Source: Macrostomum lignano (lineage: Eukaryota). Taken from it: a stretch of DNA of 64,000 bases. Each line of letters opens with the position of its first letter. Positions within the stretch are counted from its first letter, which is position 1. The stretch covers positions 62,001 through 126,000 of the forward strand of contig NIVC01001935.1 in the NCBI GenBank assembly GCA_002269645.1. The letters run 5' to 3'. Both the position numbers and the translations under genes were made by a program. Below are positions 4,393 to 58,464 of the stretch, in pieces. Under the pieces are notes generated by a model. That model searched no databases. It was not told the DNA's origin and was given only the letters and a program-made list of their open reading frames with translations.

Positions 4393-4457
4393 ATATCTGG
4401 AATGATCATTCAGACCTATATAATAATCGCACCAATCTACATACTAATTAATTTTAG

Positions 4458-12078: not shown

Positions 12079-12448
12079 AGGGGGGGGGGGGCGTAGCCCA
12101 GCGGTCTAGCGCAGGCTCTGGTGTGCCAGCGACCCAGGCTCGATTCCAAGTGTGGTCACATTAATTTGGGGCTGAATTGGAATCTCGGCTTGGCTCTGCT
12201 CGTGCAATTAACGGCCTTGAGAGCCAACCCCCCAAGGCGCAGTAAAGTGTAAATGCCTAGCGATAAAATAAAGTTAGGGCCGCTGTACACTCCTGTGTGA
12301 TTGTGTGCCTGCGTATCCGCGCGCTTGTATGCCTGCTCAGGGGAGTCTGCGGAATGGGGAGTAATGCCTCTCGCCGGTTGTGTGCCTATGTCGCTAAAAG
12401 GTGCGCCAGGGTGCACACAACCCCCCTGCCGCTAATAAAAAAACAAAA
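12079..12448 (+). mobile_element. Full-length tRNA-derived SINE (~370 bp) with 10-bp target-site duplication
   Basis: Pol III A box TAGCCCAGCGG (12094-12104), B box GGCTCGATTCC (12137-12147) at tRNA-like spacing, A-rich tail TAATAAAAAAACAAAA, flanking direct repeat ACACACTCTT at 12069-12078 and 12449-12458. Confidence 0.8.
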
Positions 12449-38014: not shown

Positions 38015-38520
38015 TACCAGCTACAGAGGGGCACCAGCTACAGACAGAGGGCGCCAGCTACAGACAGGGGCACCAGCTACAGACAGGGGTGCCAACTACA
38101 AACAGGAGTGCCAGCTACGAACAGGGGCGCCAGCTACAGACAGGGGCGCCAGCTACAGAGAGGGCGCCAGCTACAAACAGAAGCGCGAGCTACAGACAGA
38201 GGGCGCCAGCTACAGAGAGGGCGCCAGTCAAAGAGGCAACGCCAGCTACAGACAGGGCGCAATCTACAGACAGGGTGCCAGCTACAGACAGGGGCGCCAG
38301 CTACAGACAGAGGGCGCCAGCTACAGACAGAGGGCGCCAGCTACAGACAGGGGTGCCAGCTACAGACAGGGGCGCCAGCTACAGACAGAGGGCGCCAGCT
38401 ACAGACAGAGGGCGCCAGCTACAGACAGGGGTGCCAGCTACAGACAGAGGGCGCCAGCTACGGAGAGGGCGCCAGTCAAAGAGGCGGCGCCAGTCAAAGA
38501 GGCAGCGCCAGCTACAGAGG
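38015..38520. repeat. ~20-21-bp minisatellite (GGCGCCAGCTACAGACAGAG), intergenic
   Basis: Tandem unit read directly. Confidence 0.9.
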
Positions 38521-38876: not shown

Positions 38877-39880
38877 ATGAATTTTCTTACTGCGGTGGCG
38901 ATGGCTGGTGTGCTGGCTGGCGTCGCGAGCTCCTATGGAAACGAGGCGAGTCAGCTGTCCATCGGGGAGCTCCACAAGCCTTGAGCACGAGCTGTCAAAT
39001 CTCTGGAACTTTTCAGTCGAAGCAGTGCTGTGATGCTGCCTCGGAGCTTCTCCTGGTAGCTCTGGTCAGTTGTCACCTCCAGAGAGGTGCCCTGGAGCTT
39101 CTCCTGGTAGCTCTGGTCAGTTGTCACCTCCAGAGAGGTGCCCTGGAGCTTCTCCTGGTAGCTCTGATCAGTTGTCACCTCCAGAGAGGTGCCCTGGAGC
39201 TTCTCCTGGTAGCTCTGGTCAGTTGTCACCTCCAGAGAGGTGCCCTGGAGCTTCTCCTGGTAGCTCTGATCAGTTGTCACCTCCAGAGAGGTGCCCTGGA
39301 GCTTCTCCTGGTAGCTCTGGTCAGTTGTCACCTTCAGAGAGGTGCCCTGGAGCTTCTCCTGGTAGCTCTGGTCAGTTGTCACCTTCAGAGAGGTGCCCTG
39401 GAGCTTCTCCTGGTAGCTCTGATCAGTTGTCACCTCCAGAGAGGTGCCGGGGCATGTTCCACAACCCGAACATGTTGTGGGCCCAGATCACGGATGATGA
39501 TGTTCGGATCGGTGAGTGTAACCATTGCATGCATGCTTGTTTGCTCAGAGTGTCAGTGCTCAGGGACCAGCGTGACTTCGCGGTTTCTGACTGCGGATTG
39601 ACTTGTCGTCTTGACTTGTTTCGTCGCCCAAAGCCCCCCCCCCGGCGACCTGATTGACTAATAAAGTCGTATCAACGCCTAAGAGATGACTGAAACCGTT
39701 TAATCAGTTCGCAGGAGTGCATTCGCACCAGAAGAGCCTCATGAGCTGAACTGCATGCTGGTGGACCCGGAAGACATCGTCAAGTCCTGCTGCTGCCGGC
39801 CCTGCACTCGCGGCTATATGTTCGGCTTCTGCGCCAGCCCAATACCGCTGCGATCCAGGCCCAGACCGGGGCTTTACTGA
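38877..39880 (+). CDS. ilp: Insulin/relaxin-superfamily prepropeptide (ILP-A), ~127 aa; middle exons uncertain
   Basis: Signal-peptide exon 38877-38945 (MNFLTAVAMAGVLAGVASSYGNE, GC donor); candidate exons 39017-39086 and 39440-39511; last exon 39708-39880 with dibasic RR and A-chain DIVKSCCCRPCTRGYMFGFC (CC-x3-C-x8-C) at 39773-39832. The model totals 384 nt in frame. Confidence 0.75.
39043..39448. repeat. 51-bp tandem repeat, 8 copies, inside ILP-A at the B-chain
   Basis: Unit GGAGCTTCTCCTGGTAGCTCTGGTCAGTTGTCACCTCCAGAGAGGTGCCCT. Confidence 0.95.
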
Positions 39881-40546
39881 TCAATGCTAGGGAATCACTT
39901 GGCTGCTCCGAGATTATTGTTGATTGAAGTGGCTAAAATCTGCGCCTTTTCCATCTGCTACTTTTCTGGTTGAAATGTACTTTTAAAAGCAGTTTTGTTA
40001 AATAAGCAATGGTTAAATAAACAGACAATGAGAGATCACCTACTGAAAAGTAGTAAAAGAAGAATTGGAAGCGATGGATGAATGGCGTTGACGTTAAATG
40101 AACGCGGCTTTATCTATTGTGGTATATGCGCATATAAAGTACCTGGTATATTTCATTTCACACACATTGGCCATAGACACTGCCCCTGTTAACCCTGCGT
40201 TCTAAAGCTAATATAAGGAGAGCAAATATAAAGGAAATGAATGTTAACATCGGCATGGCAAGAGCCCGCTACCAAGCTTGAGATTACTAACCATAATTCA
40301 CCTGGACTTCGAGTTGGTAACGGAAGTCGGATGTAACATCTATCTATAACATACTTTTAGAATTTTGAAAATATCTGCCGGCATTCAGAAGTTACGAGCT
40401 TATGTCCAATCCAGAACCGCGCCCTTGGGTATAACTTACAGAAACTAAAAAAAACAGGTACGGAGTACGACCTATGGGATGACTCAACACGATTGATAAG
40501 TCATTTTCTGGAAGTTATACCCAAGGGCACGCTAGTAGATTGGAAA

Positions 40547-42045
40547 TCACTCATAACGGAATAAAAACACAAAGTGCTGCTGCTCAAGCTGCAGGGACCG
40601 CGCAGGCGAGGCCGAGGGCGAACGGCGAGATATCCTGATAGGCTTTTGACTTTTTGAAGGCTTTGGCCCAGAGACGCGTTCTCTGACTTCTCCCCCCTTT
40701 CTGGCCACTGCGTGGCTGGCGGGTGAAGTATTTTGTAGTAGTGAGTTGTTGTAAACTCTATAATAACACAAATGTACGACGCTGTAAAAGACTGTATTGC
40801 GGTTCTGACTTCGAACTCAACGCTGGCGCAGTGCTGAAGCAGGTAACTCCGCCTGCACCAAGTGCAGCAGCATCTGGTGAACAGGTCGTTACTCCTATTT
40901 GCGATATTAATTCTGCATTGCAAGTCCCTGCGTGTCGGCGGCCGGCGGCGCTGCCCTGAAGTCCTCTCCACTGAAAGTGTGCGGTTTCAATAAACCTTAA
41001 ATTCTCTTTCAGGCTTTACCGATAAAAAATGGTAAAAATTGTTTGACTGCCTACTCGGACCGCCTATGAAAGCTGCAGACCTCTTTAAGAGGCTCGCGTG
41101 GCTAGGGCCGTCGTAGAGACCACCCCGATGAGAGCACAAATCCACGACCGTATTGATTAGCGACCGGCCGCAAAGATTGATGAGATCATCCTGCAACAGG
41201 GGGGACTACGGCTTGAGATTGATGAGATCATCCTGCAACAGGGGGGACTACGGCTTGAGATTGATGAGATCATCCTGCAACAGGGGGGACTACGGCTTGA
41301 GATTGATGAGATCATCCTGCAACAGGGGGGACTACGGCTTGAGATTGATGAGATCATCCTGCAACAGGGGGGACTACGGCTTGAGATTGATGAGATCATC
41401 CTGCAACAGGGGGGACTACGGCTTGAGATTGATGAGATCATCCTGCAACAGGGGGGATTACGGCTTGAGATTGATGAGATCATCCTGCAACAGGAGGGGG
41501 ATTACGGCTTGAGATTGATGAGATCATCCTGCAACAGGGGGGATTACGGCTTGAGATTGATGAGATCATCCTGCAACAGGGGGGACTACGGCTTGAGATT
41601 GATGAGATCATCCTGCAACAGGGGGGATTACGGCTTGAGATTGATGAGATCATCCTGCAACAGGAGGGGGATTACGGCTTGAGATTGATGAGATCATCCT
41701 GCAACAGGAGGGGGATTACGGCTTGAGATTGATGAGATCATCCTGCAACAGGAGGGGTTACGGCTTGAGATTGATGAGACCATAATGCAACAGGGGGGCT
41801 CACTTCCATGGCGTGTCAGTGCCCACAGCTCCTCTGCAAACTGACTCACTATGAGTCCGAGTTCCAGATTGGCTAAGGCTAAGGTGGATTTAAGGCAGAT
41901 TCACCTACCTTAAATCCACCTACCCTAGTAGGCTAAGGTAGATCCACCTTTACAGATTGGCCAAGGTGGATCTCACCTCAAACCCAGCGGAATCCACGGC
42001 CGCAACAGCCAGGCTGGCCAAGAAAAGCTCAGTCAGGAACTTCAT
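40547..42045 (-). CDS. ilp: Insulin/IGF-like prepropeptide (ILP-B), ~188 aa, with basic C-terminal extension
   Basis: Exons 42045-41977 (signal MKFLTELFLASLAVAAVDSAGFE), 41190-41055 or -41020 (B chain NLCGRSLINTVVDLC, C-x11-C, then KR), 40970-40778 (RRR/RR then DLFTRCCCTWCRRSYLLQHC), 40715-40547 (Arg/Lys/Ser-rich tail). The model with the 41055 donor totals 567 nt in frame. Confidence 0.85.
41173..41800. repeat. 42-bp tandem repeat, ~15 copies, duplicating the ILP-B intron 1 / exon 2 junction
   Basis: Minus-strand unit AAGCCGTAGTCCCCCCTGTTGCAG/GATGATCTCATCAATCTC; the last copy runs into the true B-chain exon. Confidence 0.95.
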
Positions 42046-42387: not shown

Positions 42388-42418
<31 letters not shown>

Positions 42419-42695
42419 TGACTGACTGACTGACTGACTGACTGACTGACTGACTGACTGACTGACTGACTGACTGACTGACTGACTGACTGACTGACTG
42501 ACTGACTGACTGACTGACTGACTGACTGACTGACTGACTGACTGACTGACTGACTGACTGACTGACTGACTGACTGACTGACTGACTGACTGACTGACTG
42601 ACTGACTGACTGACTGACTGACTGACTGACTGACTGACTGACTGACTGACTGACTGACTGACTGACTGACTGACTGACTGACTGACTGACTGACT

Positions 42696-42774
<79 letters not shown>

Positions 42775-44607
42775 TGACTGACTGACTGACTGACTGACTG
42801 ACTGACTGACTGACTGACTGACTGACTGACTGACTGACTGACTGACTGACTGACTGACTGACTGACTGACTGACTGACTGACTGACTGACTGACTGACTG
42901 ACTGACTGACTGACTGACTGACTGACTGACTGACTGACTGACTGACTGACTGACTGACTGACTGACTGACTGACTGACTGACTGACTGACTGACTGACTG
43001 ACTGACTGACTGACTGACTGACTGACTGACTGACTGACTGACTGACTGACTGACTGACTGACTGACTGACTGACTGACTGACTGACTGACTGACTGACTG
43101 ACTGACTGACTGACTGACTGACTGACTGACTGACTGACTGACTGACTGACTGACTGACTGACTGACTGACTGACTGACTGACTGACTGACTGACTGACTG
43201 ACTGACTGACTGACTGACTGACTGACTGACTGACTGACTGACTGACTGACTGACTGACTGACTGACTGACTGACTGACTGACTGACTGACTGACTGACTG
43301 ACTGACTGACTGACTGACTGACTGACTGACTGACTGACTGACTGACTGACTGACTGACTGACTGACTGACTGACTGACTGACTGACTGACTGACTGACTG
43401 ACTGACTGACTGACTGACTGACTGACTGACTGACTGACTGACTGACTGACTGACTGACTGACTGACTGACTGACTGACTGACTGACTGACTGACTGACTG
43501 ACTGACTGACTGACTGACTGACTGACTGACTGACTGACTGACTGACTGACTGACTGACTGACTGACTGACTGACTGACTGACTGACTGACTGACTGACTG
43601 ACTGACTGACTGACTGACTGACTGACTGACTGACTGACTGACTGACTGACTGACTGACTGACTGACTGACTGACTGACTGACTGACTGACTGACTGACTG
43701 ACTGACTGACTGACTGACTGACTGACTGACTGACTGACTGACTGACTGACTGACTGACTGACTGACTGACTGACTGACTGACTGACTGACTGACTGACTG
43801 ACTGACTGACTGACTGACTGACTGACTGACTGACTGACTGACTGACTGACTGACTGACTGACTGACTGACTGACTGACTGACTGACTGACTGACTGACTG
43901 ACTGACTGACTGACTGACTGACTGACTGACTGACTGACTGACTGACTGACTGACTGACTGACTGACTGACTGACTGACTGACTGACTGACTGACTGACTG
44001 ACTGACTGACTGACTGACTGACTGACTGACTGACTGACTGACTGACTGACTGACTGACTGACTGACTGACTGACTGACTGACTGACTGACTGACTGACTG
44101 ACTGACTGACTGACTGACTGACTGACTGACTGACTGACTGACTGACTGACTGACTGACTGACTGACTGACTGACTGACTGACTGACTGACTGACTGACTG
44201 ACTGACTGACTGACTGACTGACTGACTGACTGACTGACTGACTGACTGACTGACTGACTGACTGACTGACTGACTGACTGACTGACTGACTGACTGACTG
44301 ACTGACTGACTGACTGACTGACTGACTGACTGACTGACTGACTGACTGACTGACTGACTGACTGACTGACTGACTGACTGACTGACTGACTGACTGACTG
44401 ACTGACTGACTGACTGACTGACTGACTGACTGACTGACTGACTGACTGACTGACTGACTGACTGACTGACTGACTGACTGACTGACTGACTGACTGACTG
44501 ACTGACTGACTGACTGACTGACTGACTGACTGACTGACTGACTGACTGACTGACTGACTGACTGACTGACTGACTGACTGACTGACTGACTGACTGACTG
44601 ACTGACT

Positions 44608-44658
<51 letters not shown>

Positions 44659-45349
44659 TGACTGACTGACTGACTGACTGACTGACTGACTGACTGACTG
44701 ACTGACTGACTGACTGACTGACTGACTGACTGACTGACTGACTGACTGACTGACTGACTGACTGACTGACTGACTGACTGACTGACTGACTGACTGACTG
44801 ACTGACTGACTGACTGACTGACTGACTGACTGACTGACTGACTGACTGACTGACTGACTGACTGACTGACTGACTGACTGACTGACTGACTGACTGACTG
44901 ACTGACTGACTGACTGACTGACTGACTGACTGACTGACTGACTGACTGACTGACTGACTGACTGACTGACTGACTGACTGACTGACTGACTGACTGACTG
45001 ACTGACTGACTGACTGACTGACTGACTGACTGACTGACTGACTGACTGACTGACTGACTGACTGACTGACTGACTGACTGACTGACTGACTGACTGACTG
45101 ACTGACTGACTGACTGACTGACTGACTGACTGACTGACTGACTGACTGACTGACTGACTGACTGACTGACTGACTGACTGACTGACTGACTGACTGACTG
45201 ACTGACTGACTGACTGACTGACTGACTGACTGACTGACTGACTGACTGACTGACTGACTGACTGACTGACTGACTGACTGACTGACTGACTGACTGACTG
45301 ACTGACTGACTGACTGACTGACTGACTGACTGACTGACTGACTGACTGA
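42388..45349. repeat. (ACTG)n tetranucleotide tract, ~740 units, near-perfect
   Basis: Read directly; only four variants seen (ACTT at ~42392, 42720, 42748, 44632). Confidence 0.98.
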
Positions 45350-45920
45350 CACCAGATCGATCCCTACTGACAACAGTAGTAAATTAAAGTACGCGTGTGC
45401 CACCCAGAGCAGGTGCTACGGCAGGCCCTGACAGGTAGGAACTGGTGTGAAGGAAACAACACTTACAAACGAAGCAAACTCCTCTGGCTTTGGTTTAGGA
45501 TGAGGTTTAGAATAGGGTTTAGGATAGGGTTTAGGATAGGGTTTAGGATAGTGTTTTGTCAGGTTCGGTAGTCACTTAGTTTGATTATTTATTCAGACGC
45601 AGATTTTACTTTAGGCCAAATTTGTTAAAATCAATTTAACAAAACAGAAGCGATGGTTACTTTAGCAGTAGTATTTCACGCATAAAACTGTTTTTTAGGT
45701 TTTTTATGCGTAAATAGAAACACTGCAGTAAGCCTACATTTGAAGGGAAATGTAGGAAAGTTTTTGCAGAGAATTCCCACTCCGGGCTCTGGGCTCAGGC
45801 CTCCTTGACAGACTCCTGGACTGCTCCCGACCCTTCCTAATGTCTTTGCAATTGAAACTCTTGGATTCGTCCATCATTGGGGAAATTTTATTAATTGTTT
45901 CTGAGAGAGCTCACAGCCAC

Positions 45921-47510: not shown

Positions 47511-50500
47511 ATGCTGTCCACTCTGAACAGCGCGAAAGACAACAGTCCCAGCAACAACATCAAAGGCGCCGCCAAAGCCGCCGCCGCCGCCGCCGCCTCC
47601 AATCAGCAGCAGCAGCTCCGCTCAAACCAGTGGGCGAAGTCCGCCGGTCTCCGCGGCCGCCTGTCGCTGGACCCGGGGCTGCTCGACTTCCGGCCCGGCA
47701 CCGACGGCCGCGTTCTCGACACGGTGCGCCTCCTGCGGGGCCGCCTGGCCGCCCGGCACGGCGACTTCCTGCTGGCCGCCGCTGCCGCTGCCGGATCCGC
47801 CAAGGAAGCTGAGGCGATGATCAAAGAGGCCACCGCCCTGGAGGAGCTTCCGGCAGAAACCACAGCGGTGGCGGCCTCGGCAGAAGTATCTGCTCCGACT
47901 TCCGGCCGCGGCAAGAAAATCGGTGACGGCGATGGCGAGGAGAAAAGGGCGGAGAAAGGACCCGGGTTCGAGCCCGACTGGTCTCGATTCGAGGGTGCCT
48001 TTAGCAAGGGTGAGCGGAGCTGGGATGAGGCTGGGATGAGGCTGGGAATGACACTGAAATGAGGCTGGGATGAGACTGGGATGAGGCTGGGAGTGACACT
48101 GACAGGAGCCTGGGATGAGGCTGTGATGAGACTGGGATGGGGCTGGGAATGAGACTGACATGAGCCTGGGATGAGGCTGGGATGAGGCCGGGAATGAGAC
48201 TGACATGAGCCTGGGATGAGGCTGAGATGAGGCTGGGATGAGGCTGGGAATGAGACTGACATGAGCCTGGGATGAGGCTGGGATGAGGCTGGGGATGAGG
48301 CTGGGATGGGGCTGGGGTGAGGCTGGGGATCATTCTGGGGGTGAGGCTGGGGATGATTCTGGGGATGATTCTGGGGATGAGGCTGAGGATGAGACTGGGG
48401 ATGAGGCTGGGGAAGGGGCTGGGATGAGGCTGATGATGAGGCTGGGGATGAGGCTGGGGAATGGGCTGGGATGAGGCTGATGATGAGACTGGGGATGATT
48501 CTGGGGATTAGGCTAAGGATGATTCTGGGGATGAGGCTAAGGATGATTCTGGGGATTAGGCTAAGGATGATTCTGGGGATGAGGCTAAGGATGAATCTGG
48601 GGATGAGGCTAAGGATGAATCTGGGGATTAGGCTAAGGATGATTCTGGGGATTAGGCTAAGGATGATTCTGAGGATTAGGCTAAGGATGAATCTGGGGAT
48701 GAGGCTAAGGATGAATCTGGGGATGAGGCTAAGGATGAATCTGGGGATGAGGCTAAGGATGAGGCTGGGATGAGCTTAAAGTTTTTTGAGTGCAGCACCA
48801 ACACCGAGCCGCTGCAGGCGAAGACGCGTTCTCTCCCCCCCCCCCCCCCATAAATCAATTATCATGCCAAACGTGCCCCTCGCCCAAAAATAATCCCGGC
48901 GGAGCATCTGACACTTCTCATTCGGGCTCAGCGAAGCGACGCGCAGCTCGCACCTGCTCCATCCCAGCCCCAGCATCCCGGGCTCCCCGGATCCCCTCAG
49001 CAGGCAAAACTCGCGGCCCCATATTGGAAATCGATTGCAGCTCAGATCGGAGGAGATTTCGATTCGAATTTTCGACGCACTTGAGCTCCGAGAGTCGTTC
49101 ATCAAACGGCGCTTCAATCAGCTGAGCTGCCAGCACCCTCCGGGCTTTGATCCGCTTTGATCCGTTTATCTCTTTAAATTGGATCATTAAACTGTTGCTG
49201 GCTCGAGTTTCTCAGGCCTGTTTGTCTGCCAGTCTCGGGGTCCCCGATCTCCGAGCTTTGTCTCCCCTCTGCTATTGACTTCTCCTGGGGGACAGGTTTC
49301 CTGAAGATCGATCGCTTGAAGGAGAGGCGCGACTTTTAACGCGAAATTGTCCCAGTTTAGGGATTCTGGAATCTTGATTTTGTAAATCTTTCTTAAAAAC
49401 CTTGAAACTTAATTGAATCCCAAAAGATTAATTAAACCTCTAGATCTCACCCTATCTTGCCCAATCTCACTCAATCTCACCCAATCTCAACCAATCTCAC
49501 CTAATCTCGCCCAATCTCACCTAATCCCACCCCAATCTCACTCAGTCTCACCCAATCTCAACCAATCTCACCTAATCTCGCCCAATCTCACCTAATCCCA
49601 CCCCAATCTCACTCAGTCTCACCCAATCTCAACCAATCTTGCCCATTCCCACCCCAATCTCGCTTAATCGCACTAATCTCGCTTAATCGCACTAATCTCG
49701 CTTAATCTCACCAAATCTCACCCATTCCCACCCAATCTCACCCAATCTCACCCAATATTACTCAATCTCACCCAATCTCGCTTAATCTCACAAATCTCAC
49801 CCATTCCCAATCTAATCTCACCCAATTTCACCCAACATTACTCATTCTCACCAATATCTAAAAATCTCTTCTATTCTTTAAAAAGTCTCTACGAAGATAT
49901 CTCACCCGAGATGTCAAAGTCTCACCCGAGATGTCAAAGTCTCACCCCAGATGTCAAAGTCTTACCCGAGATGTCAAAGTCTCACCCGAGATGTCAAAGT
50001 CTCACCCGAGATGTCAAAGTCTCACCCGAGATGTCAAAGTCTCACCCGAGATGTCAAAGTCTCACCCCAGATGTCAAAGTCTTACCCGAGATGTCAAAGT
50101 CTCACCCGAGATGTCAAAGTCTCACCCGAGATGTCAAAGTCTCACCCGAGATGTCAAAGTCTCACCCGAGATGTCAAAGTCTCACCCGAGATGTCAAAGT
50201 CTCACCCGAGATGTCAAAGTCTCACCCGAGATGTCAAAGTCTCACCCGAGATGTCAAAGTCTTACCCGAGATATCAAAGTCTCACCCGAGATGTCAAAGT
50301 CTTACCCGAGATATCAAATTCTCACCCATCGCCATCCCCGCAGAGATGCTGCCAGCCGAGCAGGGCTACGAAGGCACGGTCAGTTTCATCACGGAGGTGG
50401 TGGACCTGCTGCTGGAGTACCTGCACCGTATCAATGACCGCAGCAACAAGGTGCTGGACTTTCACCACCCTCACCAGCTGCGGGAGGCCCTCAGCCACTG

Positions 50501-53500
50501 CCTGGAGATCCCCGTGGAGCCGCGCGACCTGGAGCAGATCCTCAGCGACTGCAAGGAGACGCTGAAGTACGCCGTCAAGACCGGCCACCCGCGCTTCTTC
50601 AACCAGCTCTCGTCGGGCCTTGACGTCATCGCCATGGCTGGCGAGTGGCTGACGGCCGCCACCAACACCAACATGTTGGTGTGGGGAATGGCGGGTGTGG
50701 GAAATGGCGGGTTGGGAATGGCGGGTGCGGAGAATGGCGAATAAGAAATGGCGGTTGTGAGGAATGGCGAGTGGGGAATGGCGGGTGGGGAATGGCGGGT
50801 GCGGAGAATGGCGGATGAGAAATGGCGGTTGTGAGTAATGGCGGGTGTGGAGAATGGCAGGTGTAGGGAATGGAAGGTGTGGAGAATGGCAGGTGTGGAG
50901 AATGGCAGGTGTGGGGAATGGCAGGTGTGGGGAATTGCAGGTGTGGGGAATGGAAGGTGTGAAGAATGGCAGGTGTGGGGAATGGCAGGTTTGGAGAATG
51001 GCAGGTGTAGGGAATTTCAGGTGTGTGGAATTTCAGGTGTGTGGAATTTCAGGTGTGGGGAAAGGTGGGTGTGGGGAATGGCAGGTGTGAAGAATGGCGG
51101 GTGTGGGGAATGGCGGGTGTGGAGAATGGCAGGTGTGGAGAATGGCAGGTGTGGGGAATGGCAGGTGTGGGGAATTGCAGGTGTGGGGAATGGAAGGTGG
51201 GAAGAATGGCAGGTGTGGGGAATGGCAGGTTTGGAGAATGGCAGGTGTAGGGAATTTCAGGTGTGTGGAATTTCAGGTGTGTGGAATTTCAGGTGTGGGG
51301 AAAGGTGAGTGTGGGGAATGGCGAGTGTGGGAAATTGGGTGGAGAATGGAGCGCGGGGAGCGTGGAACCAATTGATGGAACACCGGAGAAACCGGCAGTG
51401 CTTTGCCCCCCCCCCCGCGCAGGTTCACCTACGAGATCGCGCCTGTTTTCGTGCTCATGGAGGAGGTCACCCTGCAGAAAATGCGAGAGCACATCGGCTG
51501 GGAGAGCGGCGACGGCATCCTGGCTCCTGGCGGCAGCATCTCCAACCTGTACGCCGCTATGGTGGCCCGGTACAACCGCTTCCCGGAGGTGAAGATGCGG
51601 GGCATGCGCGCCGTGCCGGAGTTGGCGATGTTCACCTCGAAGGACGCGCACTACTCGGTGAAGAAGTCGGCCGCGATCCTGGGCATGGGCATGGACAGCG
51701 TCTACCTGGTGGACACGGACAACAGGTAGTCGAAGCTGTCTTTGTCAGACTTGTGGTTTGGCCCTCCTGGCTATTAAATCCGCGGCAGTCGTCGGCTAAT
51801 TTTCGTGCTCAAGTCACAAATGAATGCTGGGCCGCTCGTGGAATCGAACCAGATGCGTTTCCTGCTCTCGAAAAAGCCTCCCTGGAACTTTCCATATCTT
51901 ATTTCCCGAAATGTCTCAAGAAGAGTTTCTCATCTCTGCCTTTTCAACCCCGCATGTCTCAGGGGCAAGATGCTGCCCGAGCACCTGGAGCAGCTGATCG
52001 GACTCGCCCGCAGCCGCGGTCAGGAGCCCTTCTTCGTCAGCGCCACCGGCGGCACAACCGTGCTGGGCGCCTTCGACCCGCTGGACGCGATCGCGGACGT
52101 GTGCGAGCGGCACGGGCTCTGGTTCCACGTGGACACGGCCTGGGGCGGCGGCGTGCTGCTCAGCCAGCGACACCGCCACCTGCTGGCCGGGGTGCAGCGT
52201 GCCGACTCGGTCACCTGGAATCCCCACAAGCTGATGGGCGTGACGCTGCAGTGCTCGGTGATCCTCCTGCCGGAGAGGCACATCGGCCTGCTGCAAGGCT
52301 GCAACGGCATGCAGGCGGACTACCTGTTCCAGCAGGACAAGCAGTACGACGTGAGCTACGACACGGGCGACAAGAGCATCCAGTGCGGCCGCAGGAACGA
52401 CATCTTCAAGCTCTGGCTGTCCTGGAGGGCCAAGGTGACGGCTGGGGCAGTTTCTCGATGACTGGGGCAGATTCTCAATGACTGGGGCAGAATCTCAATG
52501 ACTGGGGCAGATTCTCAATGACTGGGGCAGATTCTCAATGACTGGGGCAGATTCTCAATGACTGGGGCAGATTCTCAATGACTGGGGCAGATTCTCAATG
52601 ACTGGGGCAGATTCTCAATGACTGGGGCAGATTTCCAATGACTAGGGCAGATTCCCGATGACTGGGGCAGATTCTCAATGACTGGGGCAGATTCTCAATG
52701 ACTGGGGCAGATTCTCAATGACTGGGGCAGATTCTCAATGACTGGGGCAGATTTCCAATGACTGGGGCAGATTCCCGATGACTGGGGCAGATTCTCAATG
52801 ACTGGGGCAGATTCTCAATGACTGGGGCAGATTCTCAATGACTGGGGCAGATTCTCAATGACTGGGGCAGATTCTCAATGACTGGGGCAGATTCTCAATG
52901 ACTGGGGCAGATTCTCAATGACTGGGGCAGATTCCCGATGACTGGGGCAGATTCTCAATGACTGAGGCAGATTCTCAATGACTGGGGCAGATTCTCAATG
53001 ACTGGGGCAGATTCTCAATGACTGGGGCAGATTCTCAATGACTGGGGCAGATTCTCAATGACTGGGGCAGAATCTCAATGACTGGGGCAGATTCTCAATG
53101 ACTGGGGCAGATTTCCAATGACTAGGGCAGATTCCCGATGACTGGGGCAGATTCTCAATGACTGGGGCAGATTCTCAATGACTGGGGCAGATTCTCAATG
53201 ACTGGGGCAGATTCTCAATGACTGGGGCAGATTCTCAATGACTGGGGCAGATTCCCGATGACTGGGGCAGATTCTCAATGACTGGGGCAGATTCTCAATG
53301 ACTGGGGCAGATTCTCAATGACTGGGGCAGATTCTCAATGACTGGGGCAGATTCTCAATGACTGGGGCAGATTCTCAATGACTGGGGCAGATTCTCAATG
53401 ACTGGGGCAGATTCTCAATGACTGGGGCAGATTCTCAATGACTGGGGCAGAATCTCAATGACTGGGGCAGATTCTCAATGACTGAGGCAGATTCTCAATG

Positions 53501-56500
53501 ACTGGGGCAGATTCTCAATGACTGGGGCAGATTCCCGATGACTGGGGCAGATTCTCAATGACTGAGGCAGATTCTCAATGACTGGGGCAGATTCTCAATG
53601 ACTGGGGCAGATTCCCAGTGACTGGGGCAGATTCTCAATGACTGGGGCAGATTCCCGATGACTGGGGCAGATTCTCAATGACTGAGGCAGATTCTCAATG
53701 ACTGGGGCAGATTCTCAATGACTGGGGCAGATTCCCAGTGACTGGGGCAGATTTCCAATGACTGGGGCAGATTCTCAATGACTGGGGCAGATTTCCAATG
53801 ACTAGGGCAGATCTCAATGACTGGGGCAGATTCCCAATGACTAGGGCAGATCTCAATGACTGGAGCAGATTCTCTAGGACTGAGAACCCTAAGATTCTCA
53901 GAGACTGAGAACAAGGTTAATTGGAAATATTACTCTCGATAGGATCTTGCAGATCGGATACACACTGCAGTTTCACTTGAGCACATAATGCATTTTGCTG
54001 CAATTGCAGGGTGATGAAGGCTACGGGGAGCAGGTTGACTACCTCATCGACCTGGCCAAGTGAGTCTCCATCACCAGACGCTGATATATAAGTTAAGTCA
54101 GACCTGCTCACACCACACCACACCTGCGTTGCAGTTACCTGTGCCAGCAGCTGAAGAAGCGTCCCGGCTACGAGATGGTGATGGAGAAAGTAAGCGGCGG
54201 ATTCTGGGAGCCTTAGTGAGCTGCTTAGAAACGCCCCCGGATCAGCTTCATCAGCTTTCTAATGCTGTTTTTTCATGGCGACAGATGCACAGTGCTCCAC
54301 TTGAGTCTCTATGATAAGGCTAAGATGATGCTGAAGATGATTCTGTGAATGATTTTGGGGATGATGCTGATATGAGGCTGAGATGGTGCTGAGATGAGTC
54401 TTAAGATGAGGTCGAGATAATGCTGGAAATAATTCTGGGATGATGCTGATATGAGGTTGGGCTGATGCTGATATGAGGCTGAGATGATGCTGATATGAGG
54501 TTGGCATGATGCTGGAGATGATGCTGATATGAGGTTGGCATGATGCTGGAGATGATGCTGATATGAGGTTGGGATGATGCTGATATGAGGCTGGGATGAT
54601 GCTGATATGAGGTTGGCATGATGCTGGAGATGATGCTGATATGAGGCTGGGATGATGCTGATATGAGGTTGGGCTGATGCTGATATGAGGCTGGGATGAT
54701 GCTGATATGAGGTTGGGCTGATGCTGATATGAGGTTGGGCTGATGCTGATATGAGGCTGGGATGATGCTGGAGATGATGCTGATATGAGGCTGGGATGAT
54801 GCTGATATGAGGTTGGGATGATGCTGATATGAGGCTGGGATGATGCTGATATGAGGTTGGCATGATGCTGGAGATGATGCTGATATGAGGTTGGCATGAT
54901 GCTGGAGATGATGCTGATATGAGGTTGGCATGATGCTGGAGATGATGCTGATATGAGGTTGGCATGATGCTGGAGATGATGCTGATATGAGGTTGGGATG
55001 ATGCTGGAGATGATGCTGATATGAGGTTGGGATGATGCTGGAGATGATGCTGATATGAGGTTGGGATGATGCTGATATGAGGTTGGCATGATGCTGATAT
55101 GAGGCTGGGATGATGCTGATATGAGGTTGGCATGATGCTGGAGATGATGCTGATATGAGGTTGGGATGATGCTGATATGAGGCTGGGATGATGCTGAGAT
55201 GAGGCTGAGATCATGCTGAGATGAGGCTGAGATGATGCTGGAGATGAGGCTGAGATGAGGCTGAGATGATGCTGGAGATGAGGCTGAGATGAGGCTGAGA
55301 TGAGGCTGAGATGATGCTGGAGATGAGGCTGAGATGAGGCTAAAGATGATGCTGAGGTGAGGCTGAGATGATGCTGATATGAGGCTGGGATCAGCCTAGA
55401 ATTTTTAGAACCACTGTTCAGTTGATCGGTAGCTCAAAGCAGCTTTCTAGCGCCGTTTTCATGGCGACAGACGCGCAATGCTCCACTTGTCTTGAGCCAC
55501 TCCGATCCCCCAAAATCCGCATTCGTTAATAATTGATGCGACAGGCCAGGTGTCTGAAACCCGCCGTGGCGCCTGAGCTCTGAACTGCTCGCATGGCCAC
55601 CCCCCACCCGGGTTTGGGAAGGCCAGAGGTAGCTAATTACCGCAGTTCGCTGATCCCAGAGACAGCGCGACAGGCGCAATCTGGCGGCTGCTGTGACTGG
55701 GCAGCGGCTCAACCACCGCCCTGCTCACCGCCTCTTGCAGCCCGACTTTGTCAACGTCTGCTTCTGGTACGTGCCGGAGAAGTTCCGCTCGATGAAGCCG
55801 GGACCGGAGAGGGACAGCGCCATCAACGAGGTGAGGCCGCGTTGATGGAGTCGAGGAGATGCTGCATCCCCACTGATTGGACGACTTCAATCTGTCTGTC
55901 TCCCTCTCTGTCTCCCTCTCTGTCTCCCTCTCTGTCTCCCTCTCTGTCTCCCTCTCTGTCTCCCTCTCTGTCTCCTTCTCTGTCTCCCTCTCTGTCTCCC
56001 CTCTGTCTCCCTCTCTGTCTCCCTCTCTGTCTCCCTCTCTGTCTCCCTCTCTGTCTCCCTCTCTGTCTCCCTCTCTGTCTCCCTCTCTGTCTCCTTCTCT
56101 GTCTCCCTCTCTGTCTCCCTCTCTGTCTCCCTCTCTGTCTCCCTCTCTGTCTCCCTCTCTGTCTCCCTCTCTGTCTCCCTCTCTGTCTCCCTCTCTGTCT
56201 CCCTCTCTGTCTCCCTCTCTGTCTCCCTCTCTGTCTCCCTCTCTGTCTCCCTCTCTGTCTCCCTCTCTGTCTCCCTCTCTGTCTCCTTCTCTGTCTCCCT
56301 CTCTGTCTCCCTCTCTGTCTCCCTCTCTGTCTCCCTCTCTGTCTCCCTCTCTGTCTCCCTCTCTGTCTCCCTCTCTGTCTCCCTCTCTATCTCGCTCTCT
56401 GTCTCCCTCTCTGTCTCCCTCTCTGTCTCCCTCTCTGTCTCCCTCTCTGTCTCCCTCTCTGTCTCCCTCTCTGTCTCCCTCTCTGTCTCCCTCTCTGTCT

Positions 56501-58464
56501 CCCTCTCTGTCTCCCTCTCTGTCTCCCTCTCTGTCTCCCTCTCTGTCTCCCTCTCTGTCTCCCTCTCTGTCTCCCTCTCTGTCTCCCTCTCTGTCTCCCT
56601 CTCTGTCTCCCTCTCTGTCTCCCTCTCTGTCTCCCTCTCTGTCTCCCTCTCTGTCTCCCTCTCTGTCTCCCTCTCTGTCTCCCTCTCTGTCTATTATCTC
56701 TGTCTACTTTATACTCCCCCCTGTCGCAGACCCCAGGCGCAAGCAGAAACGCAAAAGATGAATCAGAAAAGGTTTTTCTTCTTTTGGAATCATGATACAG
56801 CTGGGAGCATGATAAATCAAAACTTGATTGCGCAGCTGGTCAAGCGGGATTTCCCTTGCGGCCGGTAAGCTTCTCAAAAAACACTTGTTATCTCATCTGC
56901 CTGCAGCCCGGAACCCGAGCTGTTTGAGTCGCTTCAATAACCACTTGGCCGCTGGGGGGAATTCTTGTCCAACCAGCTGATCCTGGGAATTGCGTCGAAA
57001 CAACAATGTTGGGATCCGAGCAGAGTGGCTGGGGATATCTCTAAGAGGGTGTGAGCTTGAGCAGGTGAGGATTAATGACAGCTTAGCATTTCCCAGCTGT
57101 CCCAACATCCCCAATCCATTATCTCCTCACAGTTTAATCCCACAGGAATCCTCTCGATCTGGTCTAGTTTCCCACCCCGAAAAAATACCAGTTCCCCAGC
57201 GCTGGGAGCCTTGGTGAGGGGATTGCAGATTGCAAGTTCGGGGACATTCATGGGAAAACTTTGCCAAAATTTCCCGATGGCGATCTCCGATCCCCAGCTT
57301 GGCCTCAGTATCGATTTTTTATTCTTCTGCGGGATTTTCGATAAAGTCTTTTTGAAGCGCTATGAGGTGCAGGTTGCGTGCTTTTAATGCCAAAGGTTGA
57401 GCATTTTTCTTCTTTCATTCCTGGTCTGCGCCATTGCCCTCCGATTGCCTAAGGCTGCCGGCCACCTCCCTTTCTCCGTCTCAATCCCCATCTCAACCCT
57501 CATCTCAATTCCCATTTCAATTCCAATCTCAATCCCCATCTCAACCCTCATCTCAATTCCCATTTCAATTCCAATCTCAATCCCCATCTCAACCCCCATC
57601 TCAACCCCCATCTCAACCCCCATCTCAACCCCCATCTCAACCCCCATCTCAACCCCCATCTCAACCCCCATCTCAATCCCCATCTCAACCCTCATCTCAA
57701 TCCCCATCTCAACCTCCATCTCAACCCCCATCTCAACCCCCATCTCAACCTCTTCATCTCAATCCCCATCTCAAATCCCCCTCTCAACCTCTATCTCAAC
57801 CCCCATCTCAATCCCCATCTCAACCCTAATCTCAATCCCAATCTCAATCTCCATCTCAATCCCAATCTCAACCCCCATCTCAATCAAAATCTCAATCCCA
57901 ATCTCAATCCCCATCTCAATCCCAATCTCAACCCCCATCTCAATCCCCATTTCAATCCCAATCCCAATCCCCATCTTAATCAAAATCTCAATACTAATCT
58001 CAATCCCAATCTCAATCCCAATCTCAATCCCAATCTCAATCCCAATCTCAACCCCCATCTCAAACCCCCATCTCAATCCCCATCTCAACCCCATCTCAAC
58101 CCCATCTCAAACCCCCCTCTCAACCCCATCTCAACCCCATCTCAACCCCCATCTCAAACCCCCCTCTCAACCCCATCTCAACCCCATCTCAACCCCCATC
58201 TCAACCCCCATCTCAACCCCTCTTCTCCCCGCCCAGGTGGCCCCCAAAGTGAAGGCGCTGATGATGGAGAGTGGCACCACAATGGTGGGCTACCAACCCC
58301 TCGGCAACCTGCCGAACTTCTTCCGCATGATCGTGTCGAACCCGGCGGCGACGGAGGCCGACATCGACTTTCTGCTGGACTGCATCGAGAAGTACTCGGC
58401 TGAGATCTTCGACGATCAGCCCGATGAGGCCGGGATTGGCGGAGGCGGCGGGCCAGCCCAGTGA
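47511..58464 (+). CDS. GAD: Glutamate decarboxylase (PLP-dependent group II), ~675 aa with long low-complexity N-terminus
   Basis: Exons 47511-48009, 50344-50674, 51423-51725, 51963-52434, 54010-54059, 54135-54189, 55741-55830, 58237-58464; 2028 nt in frame. GAD-diagnostic [42 protein letters not shown] lysine in [36 protein letters not shown]. Confidence 0.95.
48020..48772. repeat. G-rich GATGAGGCTGG-type minisatellite, 5' part of GAD intron
   Basis: Read directly. Confidence 0.9.
49440..50330. repeat. C-rich AATCTCACCC repeat (49440-49860) followed by a 20-bp CGAGATGTCAAAGTCTCACC array (~49890-50330), 3' part of the same GAD intron
   Basis: Read directly. Confidence 0.9.
50680..51330. repeat. 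G-rich ~20-bp minisatellite (GGGGAATGGCAGGTGT), GAD intron
   Basis: Read directly. Confidence 0.9.
52440..53875. repeat. 20-bp minisatellite (ATGACTGGGGCAGATTCTCA), ~70 copies, GAD intron
   Basis: Read directly; it begins immediately after donor 52435. Confidence 0.97.
54310..55390. repeat. G-rich GATGATGCTGATATGAGGTTGG-type minisatellite, GAD intron
   Basis: Read directly. Confidence 0.92.
55890..56695. repeat. 12-bp pyrimidine repeat (CTCTCTGTCTCC)n, GAD last intron
   Basis: Read directly. Confidence 0.96.
57478..58222. repeat. C-rich 12-bp repeat (CCCCATCTCAAY)n, GAD last intron
   Basis: Read directly; it runs into acceptor 58236. Confidence 0.93.

What the first reader, a model, noticed from the sequence alone, without database searches (positions are those of the whole stretch)
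39752..40910. Shared non-canonical six-cysteine A-chain region (C-x11/14-CCC-x2-C-x8-C)
Seen: ILP-A has ELNC-MLVDPEDIVKS-CCC-RP-C-x8-C and ILP-B has DLQC-RINIANRSNDLFTR-CCC-TW-C-x8-C. Both carry an extra Cys at position A8 and another 11-14 residues upstream, after the last dibasic site. Established: classical insulins have four A-chain Cys; molluscan MIPs add a fourth disulfide via one extra A-chain and one extra B-chain Cys. Inference: here the extra pair lies entirely in an N-terminally extended A chain, suggesting a fourth, intra-A disulfide closing a loop. That would be a distinct ILP subtype, and whether it is already described needs a literature check.
Basis: partly seen in the sequence, partly recalled or inferred. 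Interest (0 to 1): 0.75.

Follow-up and report, generated by a model that had tools for sequence, protein, structure and literature searches.

The report
Flatworm-type eight-cysteine insulin-like peptide genes
Two neighbouring insulin-like hormone genes really do carry two extra cysteines in an extended A chain, but this is the layout already published for flatworm insulin-like peptides, so the feature is real but not new, and one of the two genes looks damaged.

Summary
ILP-A (+ strand) encodes RR-SAFAPEEPHELN-C-x11-CCC-RP-C-x8-C-AS…stop. ILP-B (- strand) encodes TRR-DLQ-C-x14-CCC-TW-C-x8-C-AS. These are the only genuine insulin A-chain motifs in the window, and shuffles expect 0.005 such matches. 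ILP-B also has a canonical B chain (LCG-x10-C) and passes Pfam Insulin.

The pattern is not a new subtype. The same eight-cysteine frame (B chain C-x11-C; A domain C-x10–14-CCC-x2-C-x8-C) occurs in a Macrostomum lignano ILP, the only database relative found. It also occurs in planarian Smed-ILP-1, published in 2010. The signature CCCX(2)CX(8)C was reported for schistosome ILPs in 2017. It differs from molluscan MIPs and from octinsulin.

The B domains of the three full-length proteins (ILP-B, M. lignano ILP, Smed-ILP-1) hold only two cysteines, so the extra pair must lie within the extended A chain. A CysA8-to-extension bond is the likeliest pairing. It is unproven, because the AlphaFold model was too weak to judge.

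As assembled, ILP-A has no usable B chain. Its B exon carries eight copies of a 51-bp repeat and a frame mismatch, so it is probably a decaying copy or carries an assembly indel. A SINE shared with M. lignano suggests the window comes from a macrostomid flatworm.

Verdict: new members of a known kind, low to moderate interest.

The parts
38878..38934 (+). ILP-A exon 1 start: ATG and signal peptide MNFLTAVAMAGVLAGVASS. The 3' end of the exon is uncertain; the frame reaches a stop at 38982-38984 and has no good donor.
   Evidence: hydrophobic signal-like N-terminus, similar to the M. lignano ILP start MNTFALTALAFACL
39017..39511 (+). ILP-A candidate B-domain exon. The acceptor CTTTTCAG ends at 39016 and the donor GTGAGT starts at 39512. 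Frame 3 reads SKQCCDAAS(ELLLVALVSCHLQRGAL)x8, which is B-chain-like but has C-x13-C spacing. Only frame 2 (…ERCRGMFHNPNMLWAQITDDDVRI) joins exon 3 in phase 1. The exon is disrupted as assembled.
   Evidence: frame and phase reasoning from the sequence
39043..39448 (+). 51-bp tandem repeat, 8 copies, 98% alike, lying inside the ILP-A B-domain exon and in frame (17 aa per unit)
39708..39880 (+). ILP-A A-domain exon. Acceptor AG is at 39706-39707 (phase 1), RR at 39710-39715, extension Cys 39752-39754, CCC 39788-39796, Cys 39803-39805, Cys 39830-39832, stop 39878-39880.
   Evidence: tblastn with the M. lignano ILP gives E=2.5e-7
40016..40021 (+). AATAAA polyadenylation-like signal, 136 nt after the ILP-A stop codon
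41977..42045 (-). ILP-B exon 1: MKFLTELFLASLAVAAVDSAGFE, followed by donor GTGAGA (phase 0)
41174..41798 (-). 42-bp tandem repeat, 14.7 copies. Each unit holds the 3' splice site CCCCCCTGTTGCAG plus the first 17 nt of ILP-B exon 2. Upstream copies run into a stop codon (DDLINLKP*).
41055..41190 (-). ILP-B exon 2: B chain DDLINLCGRSLINTVVDLCSHRGGLYDGPSHASLL, then KR and the start of the C-peptide. Cys codons are at 41172-41170 and 41136-41134. The inferred phase-1 donor is A|GTAGGC. An alternative phase-0 donor, TCG|GTAAAG, follows 41020.
   Evidence: Pfam PF00049 27.5 bits against a cut-off of 23
40822..40970 (-). ILP-B A-domain exon. The acceptor TTTCAG ends at 40971 (phase 1). It encodes RRRPPTRR, extension Cys 40917-40915, CCC 40872-40864, Cys 40857-40855, Cys 40830-40828, then Ala-Ser.
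40501..40821 (-). Unexplained open continuation of the ILP-B frame: 107 codons after Cys-Ala-Ser, up to the stop at 40503-40501. It could be a D/E-like tail, a read-through, or a missed splice at AGC|GTTGAG.
   Evidence: there is no AATAAA or ATTAAA on the minus strand between 40830 and 40000

Best explanation
The region holds a tail-to-tail pair of insulin-like peptide genes of the platyhelminth type, most likely in a macrostomid flatworm genome.

ILP-B appears intact. It encodes a signal peptide, a B chain with the canonical C-x11-C, and a C-peptide flanked by KR and RRR/RR convertase sites. Its A chain begins 13 residues upstream of the usual A1 position. The ILP-A A-domain exon encodes the same kind of A chain with a 19-residue extension.

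All three full-length flatworm sequences (ILP-B, M. lignano ILP, Smed-ILP-1) have only two B-domain cysteines but six in the A domain. The three canonical insulin disulfides (A6-A11, A7-B7, A20-B19) therefore leave CysA8 and the extension Cys unpaired. The extension Cys sits at A-6 in ILP-A and M. lignano and at A-9 in ILP-B.

The most economical reading, which is inferred and not shown, is that these two form a fourth, intra-A-chain disulfide. It would tie the N-terminal extension back onto the end of the A1-A8 helix as a small lasso loop.

By homology with Smed-ILP-1 and the schistosome and tapeworm ILPs, the mature two-chain hormone would act on flatworm insulin-receptor tyrosine kinases in growth, stem-cell and germline control.

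As assembled, ILP-A lacks a functional B chain and is probably a decaying duplicate, or is affected by a homopolymer indel in the assembly.
For: Sequence and motifs.

Far above chance: 0.005 matches expected per window.

ILP-B passes the Pfam Insulin gathering score, 27.5 against 23 bits.

An exhaustive HMMER search of 1.84 billion representatives gives one genuine relative, M. lignano A0A1I8FJR3, at E=8.7e-7. The other hit below the threshold, P0122, is a repeat protein matching only a 24-residue stretch. A profile search adds the full-length M. lignano protein BOX15_Mlig006842g2, which reads ...KR-SSVPSIFDLG-C-x11-CCC-RW-C-x8-C.

Smed-ILP-1 reads FC-x11-C in the B chain and SPESIN-C-x10-CCC-KS-C-x8-C in the A domain. 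hhalign aligns the extension Cys and the CCC block of the two families, as does MAFFT.

Schistosome ILPs are reported with the signature CCCX(2)CX(8)C and 36-37-residue A chains.

Intron phases match the family's conserved phase-1 intron in ILP-A, ILP-B and the M. lignano gene (by reasoning from the sequence; phase-1 rule from PMC8286064).

In ILP-A, ILP-B and M. lignano there is no dibasic site between the extension Cys and the CCC.

Source organism: a tRNA-derived SINE is 80% identical to one in the M. lignano ILP locus, and a similar minisatellite lies upstream of the ILP gene in both loci.
Against: No experimental or confident computational evidence supports the proposed pairing. The AlphaFold2 model of pro-ILP-B has mean pLDDT 52, with the extension between roughly 40 and 57. 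Foldseek found only a weak insulin-analogue match, E=2.7.

In Smed-ILP-1 a KK site lies between the extension Cys and the CCC, and a fragment YSPESINCNAY was reported by mass spectrometry. In planarians the extension may therefore be cleaved off, or held only by the disulfide.

ILP-B has an RR inside its A-chain core and an unexplained 107-codon open tail.

Neither reading of ILP-A matches Pfam Insulin.

No transcript data are available for either gene.
Confidence: 0.75

Rival explanations
1. The extension cysteine is not part of a stable intramolecular lasso. Either the extension is cut off during processing, or CysA8 and the extension Cys form intermolecular bonds that give covalent dimers or oligomers.
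For: Smed-ILP-1 has KK between the extension Cys and the A-chain core, and a mass-spectrometry fragment ends there. Native SjILP was reported at monomer, dimer and trimer sizes in egg secretions (PMC6480100).
Against: ILP-A, ILP-B and the M. lignano ILP have no dibasic site between the two cysteines. An even number of cysteines is conserved in all three full-length proteins, as expected for an intramolecular pair. The oligomer observation comes from immunoblots of a different species.
Confidence: 0.15
2. ILP-A is a pseudogene or a decaying duplicate. Its six-cysteine A exon would then be a recent relic, not a second functional hormone, and only ILP-B represents the class in this locus.
For: No B chain with C-x11-C spacing was found. 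The B-like reading (frame 3, SKQCCDAASELLLVALVSCHLQRGA) has C-x13-C spacing and is expanded by eight in-frame 51-bp repeats that are 98% alike. It is also out of frame with the only phase-compatible donor. A 1-nt shift in the G-run at about 39449-39452 would restore RGAGGMFHNP, which resembles ILP-B RGGLYDGP. Neither reading hits Pfam. The M. lignano locus likewise carries a second, degenerate copy: LRC-x11-WCC-KF-C-RVSYLPIR, with no last Cys.
Against: The A exon keeps all six Cys, the RR site, Asp at A1, a stop codon and an AATAAA signal. A single-base homopolymer error in the assembly could mimic the frameshift. An all-frame-2 model (exon 1 donor GCGA|GTCAGC, acceptor in the last repeat) is open throughout, although it leaves only one B-domain Cys.
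Confidence: 0.5
3. All eight cysteines are paired, but with a non-insulin connectivity. For example, the extension Cys might pair with A6 or A11, and A8 would take over an insulin-type bond.
For: Three adjacent cysteines allow alternative pairings, and no data constrain them. Non-canonical pairings are on record for some arthropod insulin-like hormones; this is from general knowledge and was not tested here.
Against: The spacings CC-x3-C-x8-C and C-x11-C are strictly kept. This argues that the three canonical bonds are retained.
Confidence: 0.1
4. The matches are chance open-reading-frame artefacts in repeat-rich non-coding DNA.
For: The window is full of minisatellites, and one CAG/CTG artefact at 62163 also fits the regex.
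Against: Shuffles expect 0.005 matches. ILP-B passes the Pfam Insulin threshold. Signal peptides, splice sites and dibasic sites are present. There is specific homology to flatworm ILPs.
Confidence: 0.01

Closest known systems
Macrostomum lignano ILP (NCBI BOX15_Mlig006842g2; UniProt A0A1I8FJR3 'IlGF domain-containing protein')
   Same: It has the same precursor plan and the same eight-Cys frame: B chain C-x11-C, and A domain KR-…DLG-C-x11-CCC-RW-C-x8-C-A. It shares the motifs RGG(V/L)YD after B19 and N(K/R)SND before A2. It has a three-exon structure with a phase-1 intron in the C domain. Tandem repeats and a second, decayed paralogue lie in the locus.
   Different: It is only 35-40% identical to ILP-B and ILP-A. 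The paralogues are in tandem on one strand in M. lignano but tail-to-tail here. It is an uncharacterised predicted protein.
Schmidtea mediterranea Smed-ILP-1 (Collins et al. 2010, PMC2953531; GenBank BK007034)
   Same: B chain FC-x11-C. A domain C-x10-CCC-KS-C-x8-C, with the extension Cys in the same aligned column. It is expressed in neurons and testes.
   Different: It has a KK site between the extension Cys and the CCC, and a long B/C region. Sequence identity to ILP-B is about 18%.
Schistosome ILPs (SjILP, SmILP, ShILP; Du et al. 2017, PMC5391603)
   Same: The published A-chain signature CCCX(2)CX(8)C is identical to the core seen here, and the A chains are long (36-37 residues).
   Different: The authors discuss only six conserved Cys and three disulfides. 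I could not obtain the sequences, so I could not check for the extension Cys.
Molluscan insulin-related peptides (MIP) and nematode beta-type ILPs
   Same: Eight cysteines and four predicted disulfides.
   Different: The A motif is C-x-CC-x3-C-x8-C, and the partner Cys lies in the B chain, giving a third interchain bond. Here the extra A-chain Cys is at A8 and its partner is in the A extension.
Ambulacrarian octinsulin (Veenstra 2021, PMC8286064)
   Same: Eight cysteines, with KR processing sites.
   Different: The extra Cys are C-x2-C just after B19 and a CC doublet at the A-chain end (…LYCC…), as seen in the supplementary sequences.
Vertebrate insulin and IGF
   Same: The B chain LCG-x10-C, A2-A3 Ile/Val-type residues (DIVKSCC against GIVEQCC), the CC-x3-C-x8-C frame and the phase-1 intron.
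   Different: A8 is Thr or another residue, and there is no N-terminal A-chain extension. Cleavage occurs directly before A1.

Membership tests
Insulin/IGF/relaxin superfamily (Pfam PF00049) | Profile score at or above the curated gathering threshold | tested here: met
   ILP-B scores 27.5 bits against a cut-off of 23. Neither reconstruction of ILP-A gave a hit at E<=10, so this is met for ILP-B only.
Insulin/IGF/relaxin superfamily (Pfam PF00049) | A-chain frame CC-x3-C-x8-C | tested here: met
   Met by both genes.
Insulin/IGF/relaxin superfamily (Pfam PF00049) | B-chain frame C-x11-C | tested here: inconclusive
   ILP-B is met: LCGRSLINTVVDLC at 41172-41134. ILP-A is not met: one reading has a single Cys and the other has C-x13-C.
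Insulin/IGF/relaxin superfamily (Pfam PF00049) | Secreted precursor with a signal peptide and dibasic sites flanking a C domain, and a phase-1 intron in the C domain | tested here: met
   Hydrophobic N-termini, KR/RRR/RR sites and phase-1 donor/acceptor pairs were read from the sequence. No signal-peptide predictor or transcript data were available.
Platyhelminth-type ILP (Smed-ILP-1, M. lignano ILP, schistosome ILPs) | A-chain core CCC-x2-C-x8-C | tested here: met
   ILP-A CCCRPC-x8-C and ILP-B CCCTWC-x8-C, compared with CCCRWC, CCCKSC and the published signature.
Platyhelminth-type ILP (Smed-ILP-1, M. lignano ILP, schistosome ILPs) | One further Cys 10-14 residues upstream in an N-terminally extended A domain, with only two Cys in the B domain | tested here: met
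   Spacing is x11 in ILP-A, x14 in ILP-B, x11 in M. lignano and x10 in Smed.
Platyhelminth-type ILP (Smed-ILP-1, M. lignano ILP, schistosome ILPs) | Detectable sequence homology beyond the cysteines | tested here: met
   phmmer E=8.7e-7 in a library of 1.84 billion proteins. tblastn with the M. lignano ILP against the window gives E=4.9e-14 for ILP-B and 2.5e-7 for ILP-A. hhalign to Smed-ILP-1 gives E=2.7e-5.
Platyhelminth-type ILP (Smed-ILP-1, M. lignano ILP, schistosome ILPs) | Fourth disulfide between CysA8 and the extension Cys | not testable with these tools
   The AlphaFold2 model is low-confidence and gives no coordinates. No disulfide mapping was found in the literature searched.
Molluscan MIP / beta-type ILP | A motif C-x-CC-x3-C-x8-C with the partner Cys in the B chain | tested here: not met
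   There is no Cys two residues before the CC, and the ILP-B B domain has only two Cys. MIP definition taken.
Octinsulin | Extra Cys as C-x2-C after B19, and a CC doublet at the A-chain C-terminus | tested here: not met
   ILP-B reads LC-SHRGG and HC-AS.

The most novel reading that the evidence does not exclude
The A8-to-extension bond is a platyhelminth-wide feature, found from Macrostomorpha to planarians and probably in the parasitic classes. It would create a lasso-capped A chain, a fold variant of insulin that has never been structurally or functionally characterised. The schistosome ILP literature overlooks it, counting only three disulfides. It could account for flatworm-specific receptor selectivity, for example parasite ILPs binding IR2 but not IR1 or the human receptor.
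Probability: 0.45. Interest if true: 0.45.

Novelty: new member of a known kind. Interest (0 to 1): 0.3.

Why it matters
It adds two macrostomid ILP loci to the flatworm ILP family. Together with the M. lignano and planarian sequences, it shows that the eight-cysteine frame with an intra-A extra pair reaches back to the base of the flatworm tree as sampled here.

The practical value is modest. It flags that papers on schistosome ILPs, which are studied as vaccine and drug targets, describe only three disulfides although the CCC signature implies a fourth. Any recombinant or synthetic work on these peptides needs the correct pairing.

The locus is also a clear example of minisatellite expansion intruding into exons and splice sites of small hormone genes.

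Tried and rejected
1. The word-indexed homology search with the ILP-B precursor found nothing. The exhaustive HMMER search was needed to find a relative.

2. An AGO1 exon was used to identify the organism. The best match was 76%, to an ant, with flukes and bivalves close behind, so it was not informative. There were no Rfam hits in the window.

3. Octinsulin, gonadulin-type and multinsulin ILPs were considered. Octinsulin sequences from the paper's supplement show different Cys positions, so it was rejected. The multinsulin four-disulfide variants could not be inspected in detail.

4. AlphaFold2 on pro-ILP-B with a four-sequence alignment gave mean pLDDT 52. Foldseek against PDB gave one weak insulin-analogue hit at E=2.7. 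Neither was usable for disulfide geometry, and the second AlphaFold job was not spent because coordinates are not returned.

5. I searched for an ILP-A B chain by regex, by tblastn with three flatworm B chains, and by Pfam on two reconstructions. None was found. A CG-x10-C hit at 34713 is proline-rich, lies upstream of an ankyrin-like ORF, and is one of six such hits in the window, so it was dismissed.

6. Wang et al. 2014 (FEBS J), the primary description of parasitic flatworm ILPs, and Miller & Newmark 2012 are not held in the library. Whether they already propose the fourth bond is therefore unknown.

7. Literature searches for 'fourth disulfide', 'eight cysteine' and 'CCCX' found no disulfide mapping for flatworm ILPs.
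Full report
**Observation**

The window is eukaryotic, with introns packed with minisatellites.

On the + strand an exon with acceptor AG at 39706-39707 encodes (V)RR-SAFAPEEPHELN-C-MLVDPEDIVKS-CCC-RP-C-TRGYMFGF-C-ASPIPLRSRPRPGLY*. The stop is at 39878-39880 and an AATAAA signal follows at 40016.

On the - strand an exon starting at 40970 encodes …RRRPPTRR-DLQ-C-RINIANRSNDLFTR-CCC-TW-C-RRSYLLQH-C-AS….

A six-frame scan finds the insulin A-chain frame CC-x3-C-x8-C only at these two places, plus one CAG/CTG low-complexity artefact. The extended pattern is expected 0.005 times per window in 200 shuffles. Alignment to IGF-II and insulin puts the third Cys of the triplet at A8.

Three details need correcting:
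- The ILP-B extension Cys (40917-40915) lies a few bases outside the stated end of 40910.
- ILP-B has another RR inside the A-chain core, so 'after the last dibasic site' is not strictly true for it.
- Only ILP-B has a canonical B chain.

**Gene models**

ILP-B:
- Exon 1 (42045-41977) encodes MKFLTELFLASLAVAAVDSAGFE and ends at a GTGAGA donor.
- Exon 2 starts at 41190 behind a strong acceptor (CCCCCCTGTTGCAG). It encodes DDLINLCGRSLINTVVDLCSHRGGLYDGPSHASLL-KR-SAAFIGGP.
- A phase-1 donor (A|GTAGGC, exon end 41055) fits the phase-1 acceptor TTTCAG|TG at 40971/40970. This phase is the one conserved in insulin-family genes (PMC8286064), and it is also the phase in the M. lignano gene.
- The spliced product passes the Pfam Insulin threshold, 27.5 against 23 bits.
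- The 42-bp tandem array at 41174-41798 consists of the 3' splice site plus the first 17 nt of exon 2. Upstream copies run into a stop codon.
- The frame stays open for 107 codons beyond Cys-Ala-Ser, and no AATAAA follows on that strand. This is unexplained.

ILP-A:
- The signal-peptide exon starts at 38878.
- The only acceptors compatible with the A-domain frame are phase 1 (39707) or phase 2.
- The GTGAGT donor at 39512 is phase 1 only in the frame that reads …ERCRGMFHNPNMLWAQITDDDVRI, which has a single Cys.
- A good acceptor at 39015-39016 opens a different frame, reading SKQCCDAAS followed by eight in-frame copies of ELLLVALVSCHLQRGAL. This is B-chain-like but has C-x13-C spacing.
- Joining the two frames needs a one-base shift in a G-run at about 39449-39452. 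That shift would give RGAGGMFHNP, reminiscent of RGGLYDGP in ILP-B.
- Neither reading hits Pfam, and tblastn with flatworm B chains finds nothing there.
- As assembled, ILP-A therefore has an intact A-domain exon but a disrupted B-domain exon. It is either a decaying duplicate or the victim of an assembly indel.

**Relatives**

The word-indexed search found nothing.

The exhaustive HMMER search of 1.84 billion representatives returned one genuine relative (E=8.7e-7). It is annotated as a Macrostomum lignano IlGF-domain protein. The only other hit under the threshold, P0122, is a repeat protein matching a 24-residue stretch.

A profile search added the full-length M. lignano protein BOX15_Mlig006842g2: MNTFAL…NESINECGERLVQELRNACADRGGVYD…KR-SSVPSIFDLG-C-RLNKSNDVVNQ-CCC-RW-C-RVSYLQQF-C-ALPEPV. 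This is the same frame, with x11 spacing.

Its genomic locus (L001) also holds a second B-chain exon, a large tandem array, and a degenerate A exon reading LRC-x11-WCC-KF-C-RVSYLPIR….

The window shares two things with that locus: a tRNA-derived SINE at 80% identity (window 12092-12442), and a similar 19-bp minisatellite upstream of the ILP gene. The source is therefore probably a macrostomid. It does not appear to be M. lignano itself, because an AGO exon found nothing above 76% identity.

**Literature**

- Octinsulin sequences in Veenstra's supplement place the extra Cys after B19 (C-x2-C) and after A20 (CC), which is a different layout.
- MIPs have C-x-CC-x3-C-x8-C with the partner Cys in the B chain.
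- Smed-ILP-1, published in 2010, reads …FCQHRLLKAITTLC…SPESIN-C-NAYKKSLVDE-CCC-KS-C-TMLNLFKY-C…. It has exactly the present frame, with x10 spacing.
- Du et al. 2017 state the signature CCCX(2)CX(8)C for schistosome ILPs, but they speak of only six conserved Cys and three bonds.
- hhalign and MAFFT align the extension Cys and the CCC block of the macrostomid and planarian proteins.

The pattern is therefore the platyhelminth ILP frame, already public, and not a new subtype.

**Mechanism**

*Shown:*
- The cysteine counts and positions.
- Their conservation in the macrostomid sequences (window and M. lignano) and in a planarian.
- The absence of a dibasic site between the two extra Cys in the macrostomid sequences.
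- The presence of only two Cys in each of the three available B domains (ILP-B, M. lignano, Smed-ILP-1).

*Inferred:*
- The three canonical bonds form as in insulin.
- The remaining pair (CysA8 and the Cys at A-6 or A-9) forms an intra-A disulfide that ties a 13-19-residue N-terminal extension back to the end of the A1-A8 helix.

A span of 6-9 residues can cover the roughly 10 Å length of that helix, so the geometry is feasible. The AlphaFold2 model was too weak to test this (pLDDT 52, with the extension at about 40-57), and Foldseek gave no significant match.

*Alternatives:*
- Cleavage of the extension, as hinted by the KK site and the mass-spectrometry fragment in the planarian.
- Intermolecular bonding.
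- A non-canonical pairing of the eight cysteines.

**Verdict**

The class is already represented in the literature, so these are new members of a known kind.

What remains of interest is that the fourth bond appears never to have been mapped, and that the schistosome papers overlook it. Two key papers (Wang 2014; Miller & Newmark 2012) could not be read.

Noticed in passing
window 41174-41798 (- strand gene) and 39043-39448 (+ strand gene): In both ILP genes a young tandem array (97-98% alike) sits at the homologous place, the 5' end of the B-chain exon. In ILP-B each 42-bp unit repeats the 3' splice site plus 17 nt of exon, giving about 15 candidate acceptors, and all copies but the last lead to a stop. 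In ILP-A the 51-bp unit is in frame inside the exon.
   Followed up: partly
window 40501-40821, - strand: The ILP-B reading frame stays open for 107 codons after the last A-chain Cys (roughly 0.7% by chance). It contains three more Cys and a stretch RPRPRLRGP that resembles the ILP-A tail LRSRPRPGLY. No AATAAA or ATTAAA lies downstream on that strand. It is unclear whether this is an E-domain-like tail, a lost stop codon, or a missed splice at AGC|GTTGAG.
   Followed up: partly
window 12092-12442; L001 16415-16749: A tRNA-derived SINE-like element (box-B-like GGCTCGATTCCAAG, A-rich tail) is 80% identical to a copy in the M. lignano ILP locus. This is the best clue that the window comes from a macrostomid flatworm.
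   Followed up: partly
window 38017-38518; L001 8729-9240: A 19-bp minisatellite (CCAGCTACAGACAGGGGCG) lies just upstream of ILP-A. It matches, at 70-73%, an array just upstream of the M. lignano ILP gene. This could be conserved microsynteny or a shared repeat family.
   Followed up: no
ILP-B 40893-40885 (N-R-S); M. lignano P0123 residues 96-98 (N-K-S): An N-x-S glycosylation sequon sits at the same position just before A1, inside the proposed lasso loop, in ILP-B and the M. lignano ILP. It is absent from ILP-A (DPE) and from Smed-ILP-1.
   Followed up: no
L001 17594-18133 (M. lignano): About 7 kb downstream of the M. lignano ILP gene lies a multi-copy neuropeptide precursor with some ten copies of AWYVSPRLGKK (a PRL-amide, pyrokinin-like type). 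No counterpart was found in the window by tblastn.
   Followed up: partly
L001 11997-12173 and about 14230-14330 (M. lignano): A second M. lignano ILP paralogue has an intact B exon (ECGLRLIEEVTAACADWGGVYD), a 2-kb tandem array in the intron, and a degenerate A exon in which the first Cys of the triplet is Trp and the last Cys is missing. This parallels the damaged ILP-A.
   Followed up: partly
window 4457-8806, + strand: Argonaute (AGO1/2-like) exons with N, PAZ and Piwi regions, about 76% identical to insect, fluke and bivalve AGOs. The introns are filled with 27-73-bp minisatellites.
   Followed up: partly
window about 50400-58464, + strand: Exons of a PLP-dependent decarboxylase of the glutamate/cysteine-sulfinate decarboxylase type (…[13 protein letters not shown]…, …[13 protein letters not shown]…NPHKLMGV…), again interrupted by long minisatellites. 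Identified by eye only.
   Followed up: no
window 42388-45350: A 3-kb perfect (GACT)n microsatellite of about 740 units lies immediately upstream of ILP-B. A comparable tetranucleotide array lies downstream of the ILP genes in the M. lignano locus (L001 about 14790-15700).
   Followed up: no
window 63583-63663 and 61958-63265, - strand: A thrombospondin type-1-repeat-like motif (WGAWGCWSDC…CGTGKQVRLRTC) is followed by a long exon with a transmembrane-like segment and a Gln-rich tail. This is probably a membrane receptor gene. Its CAG runs create the spurious Cys-rich antisense hit at 62163.
   Followed up: no
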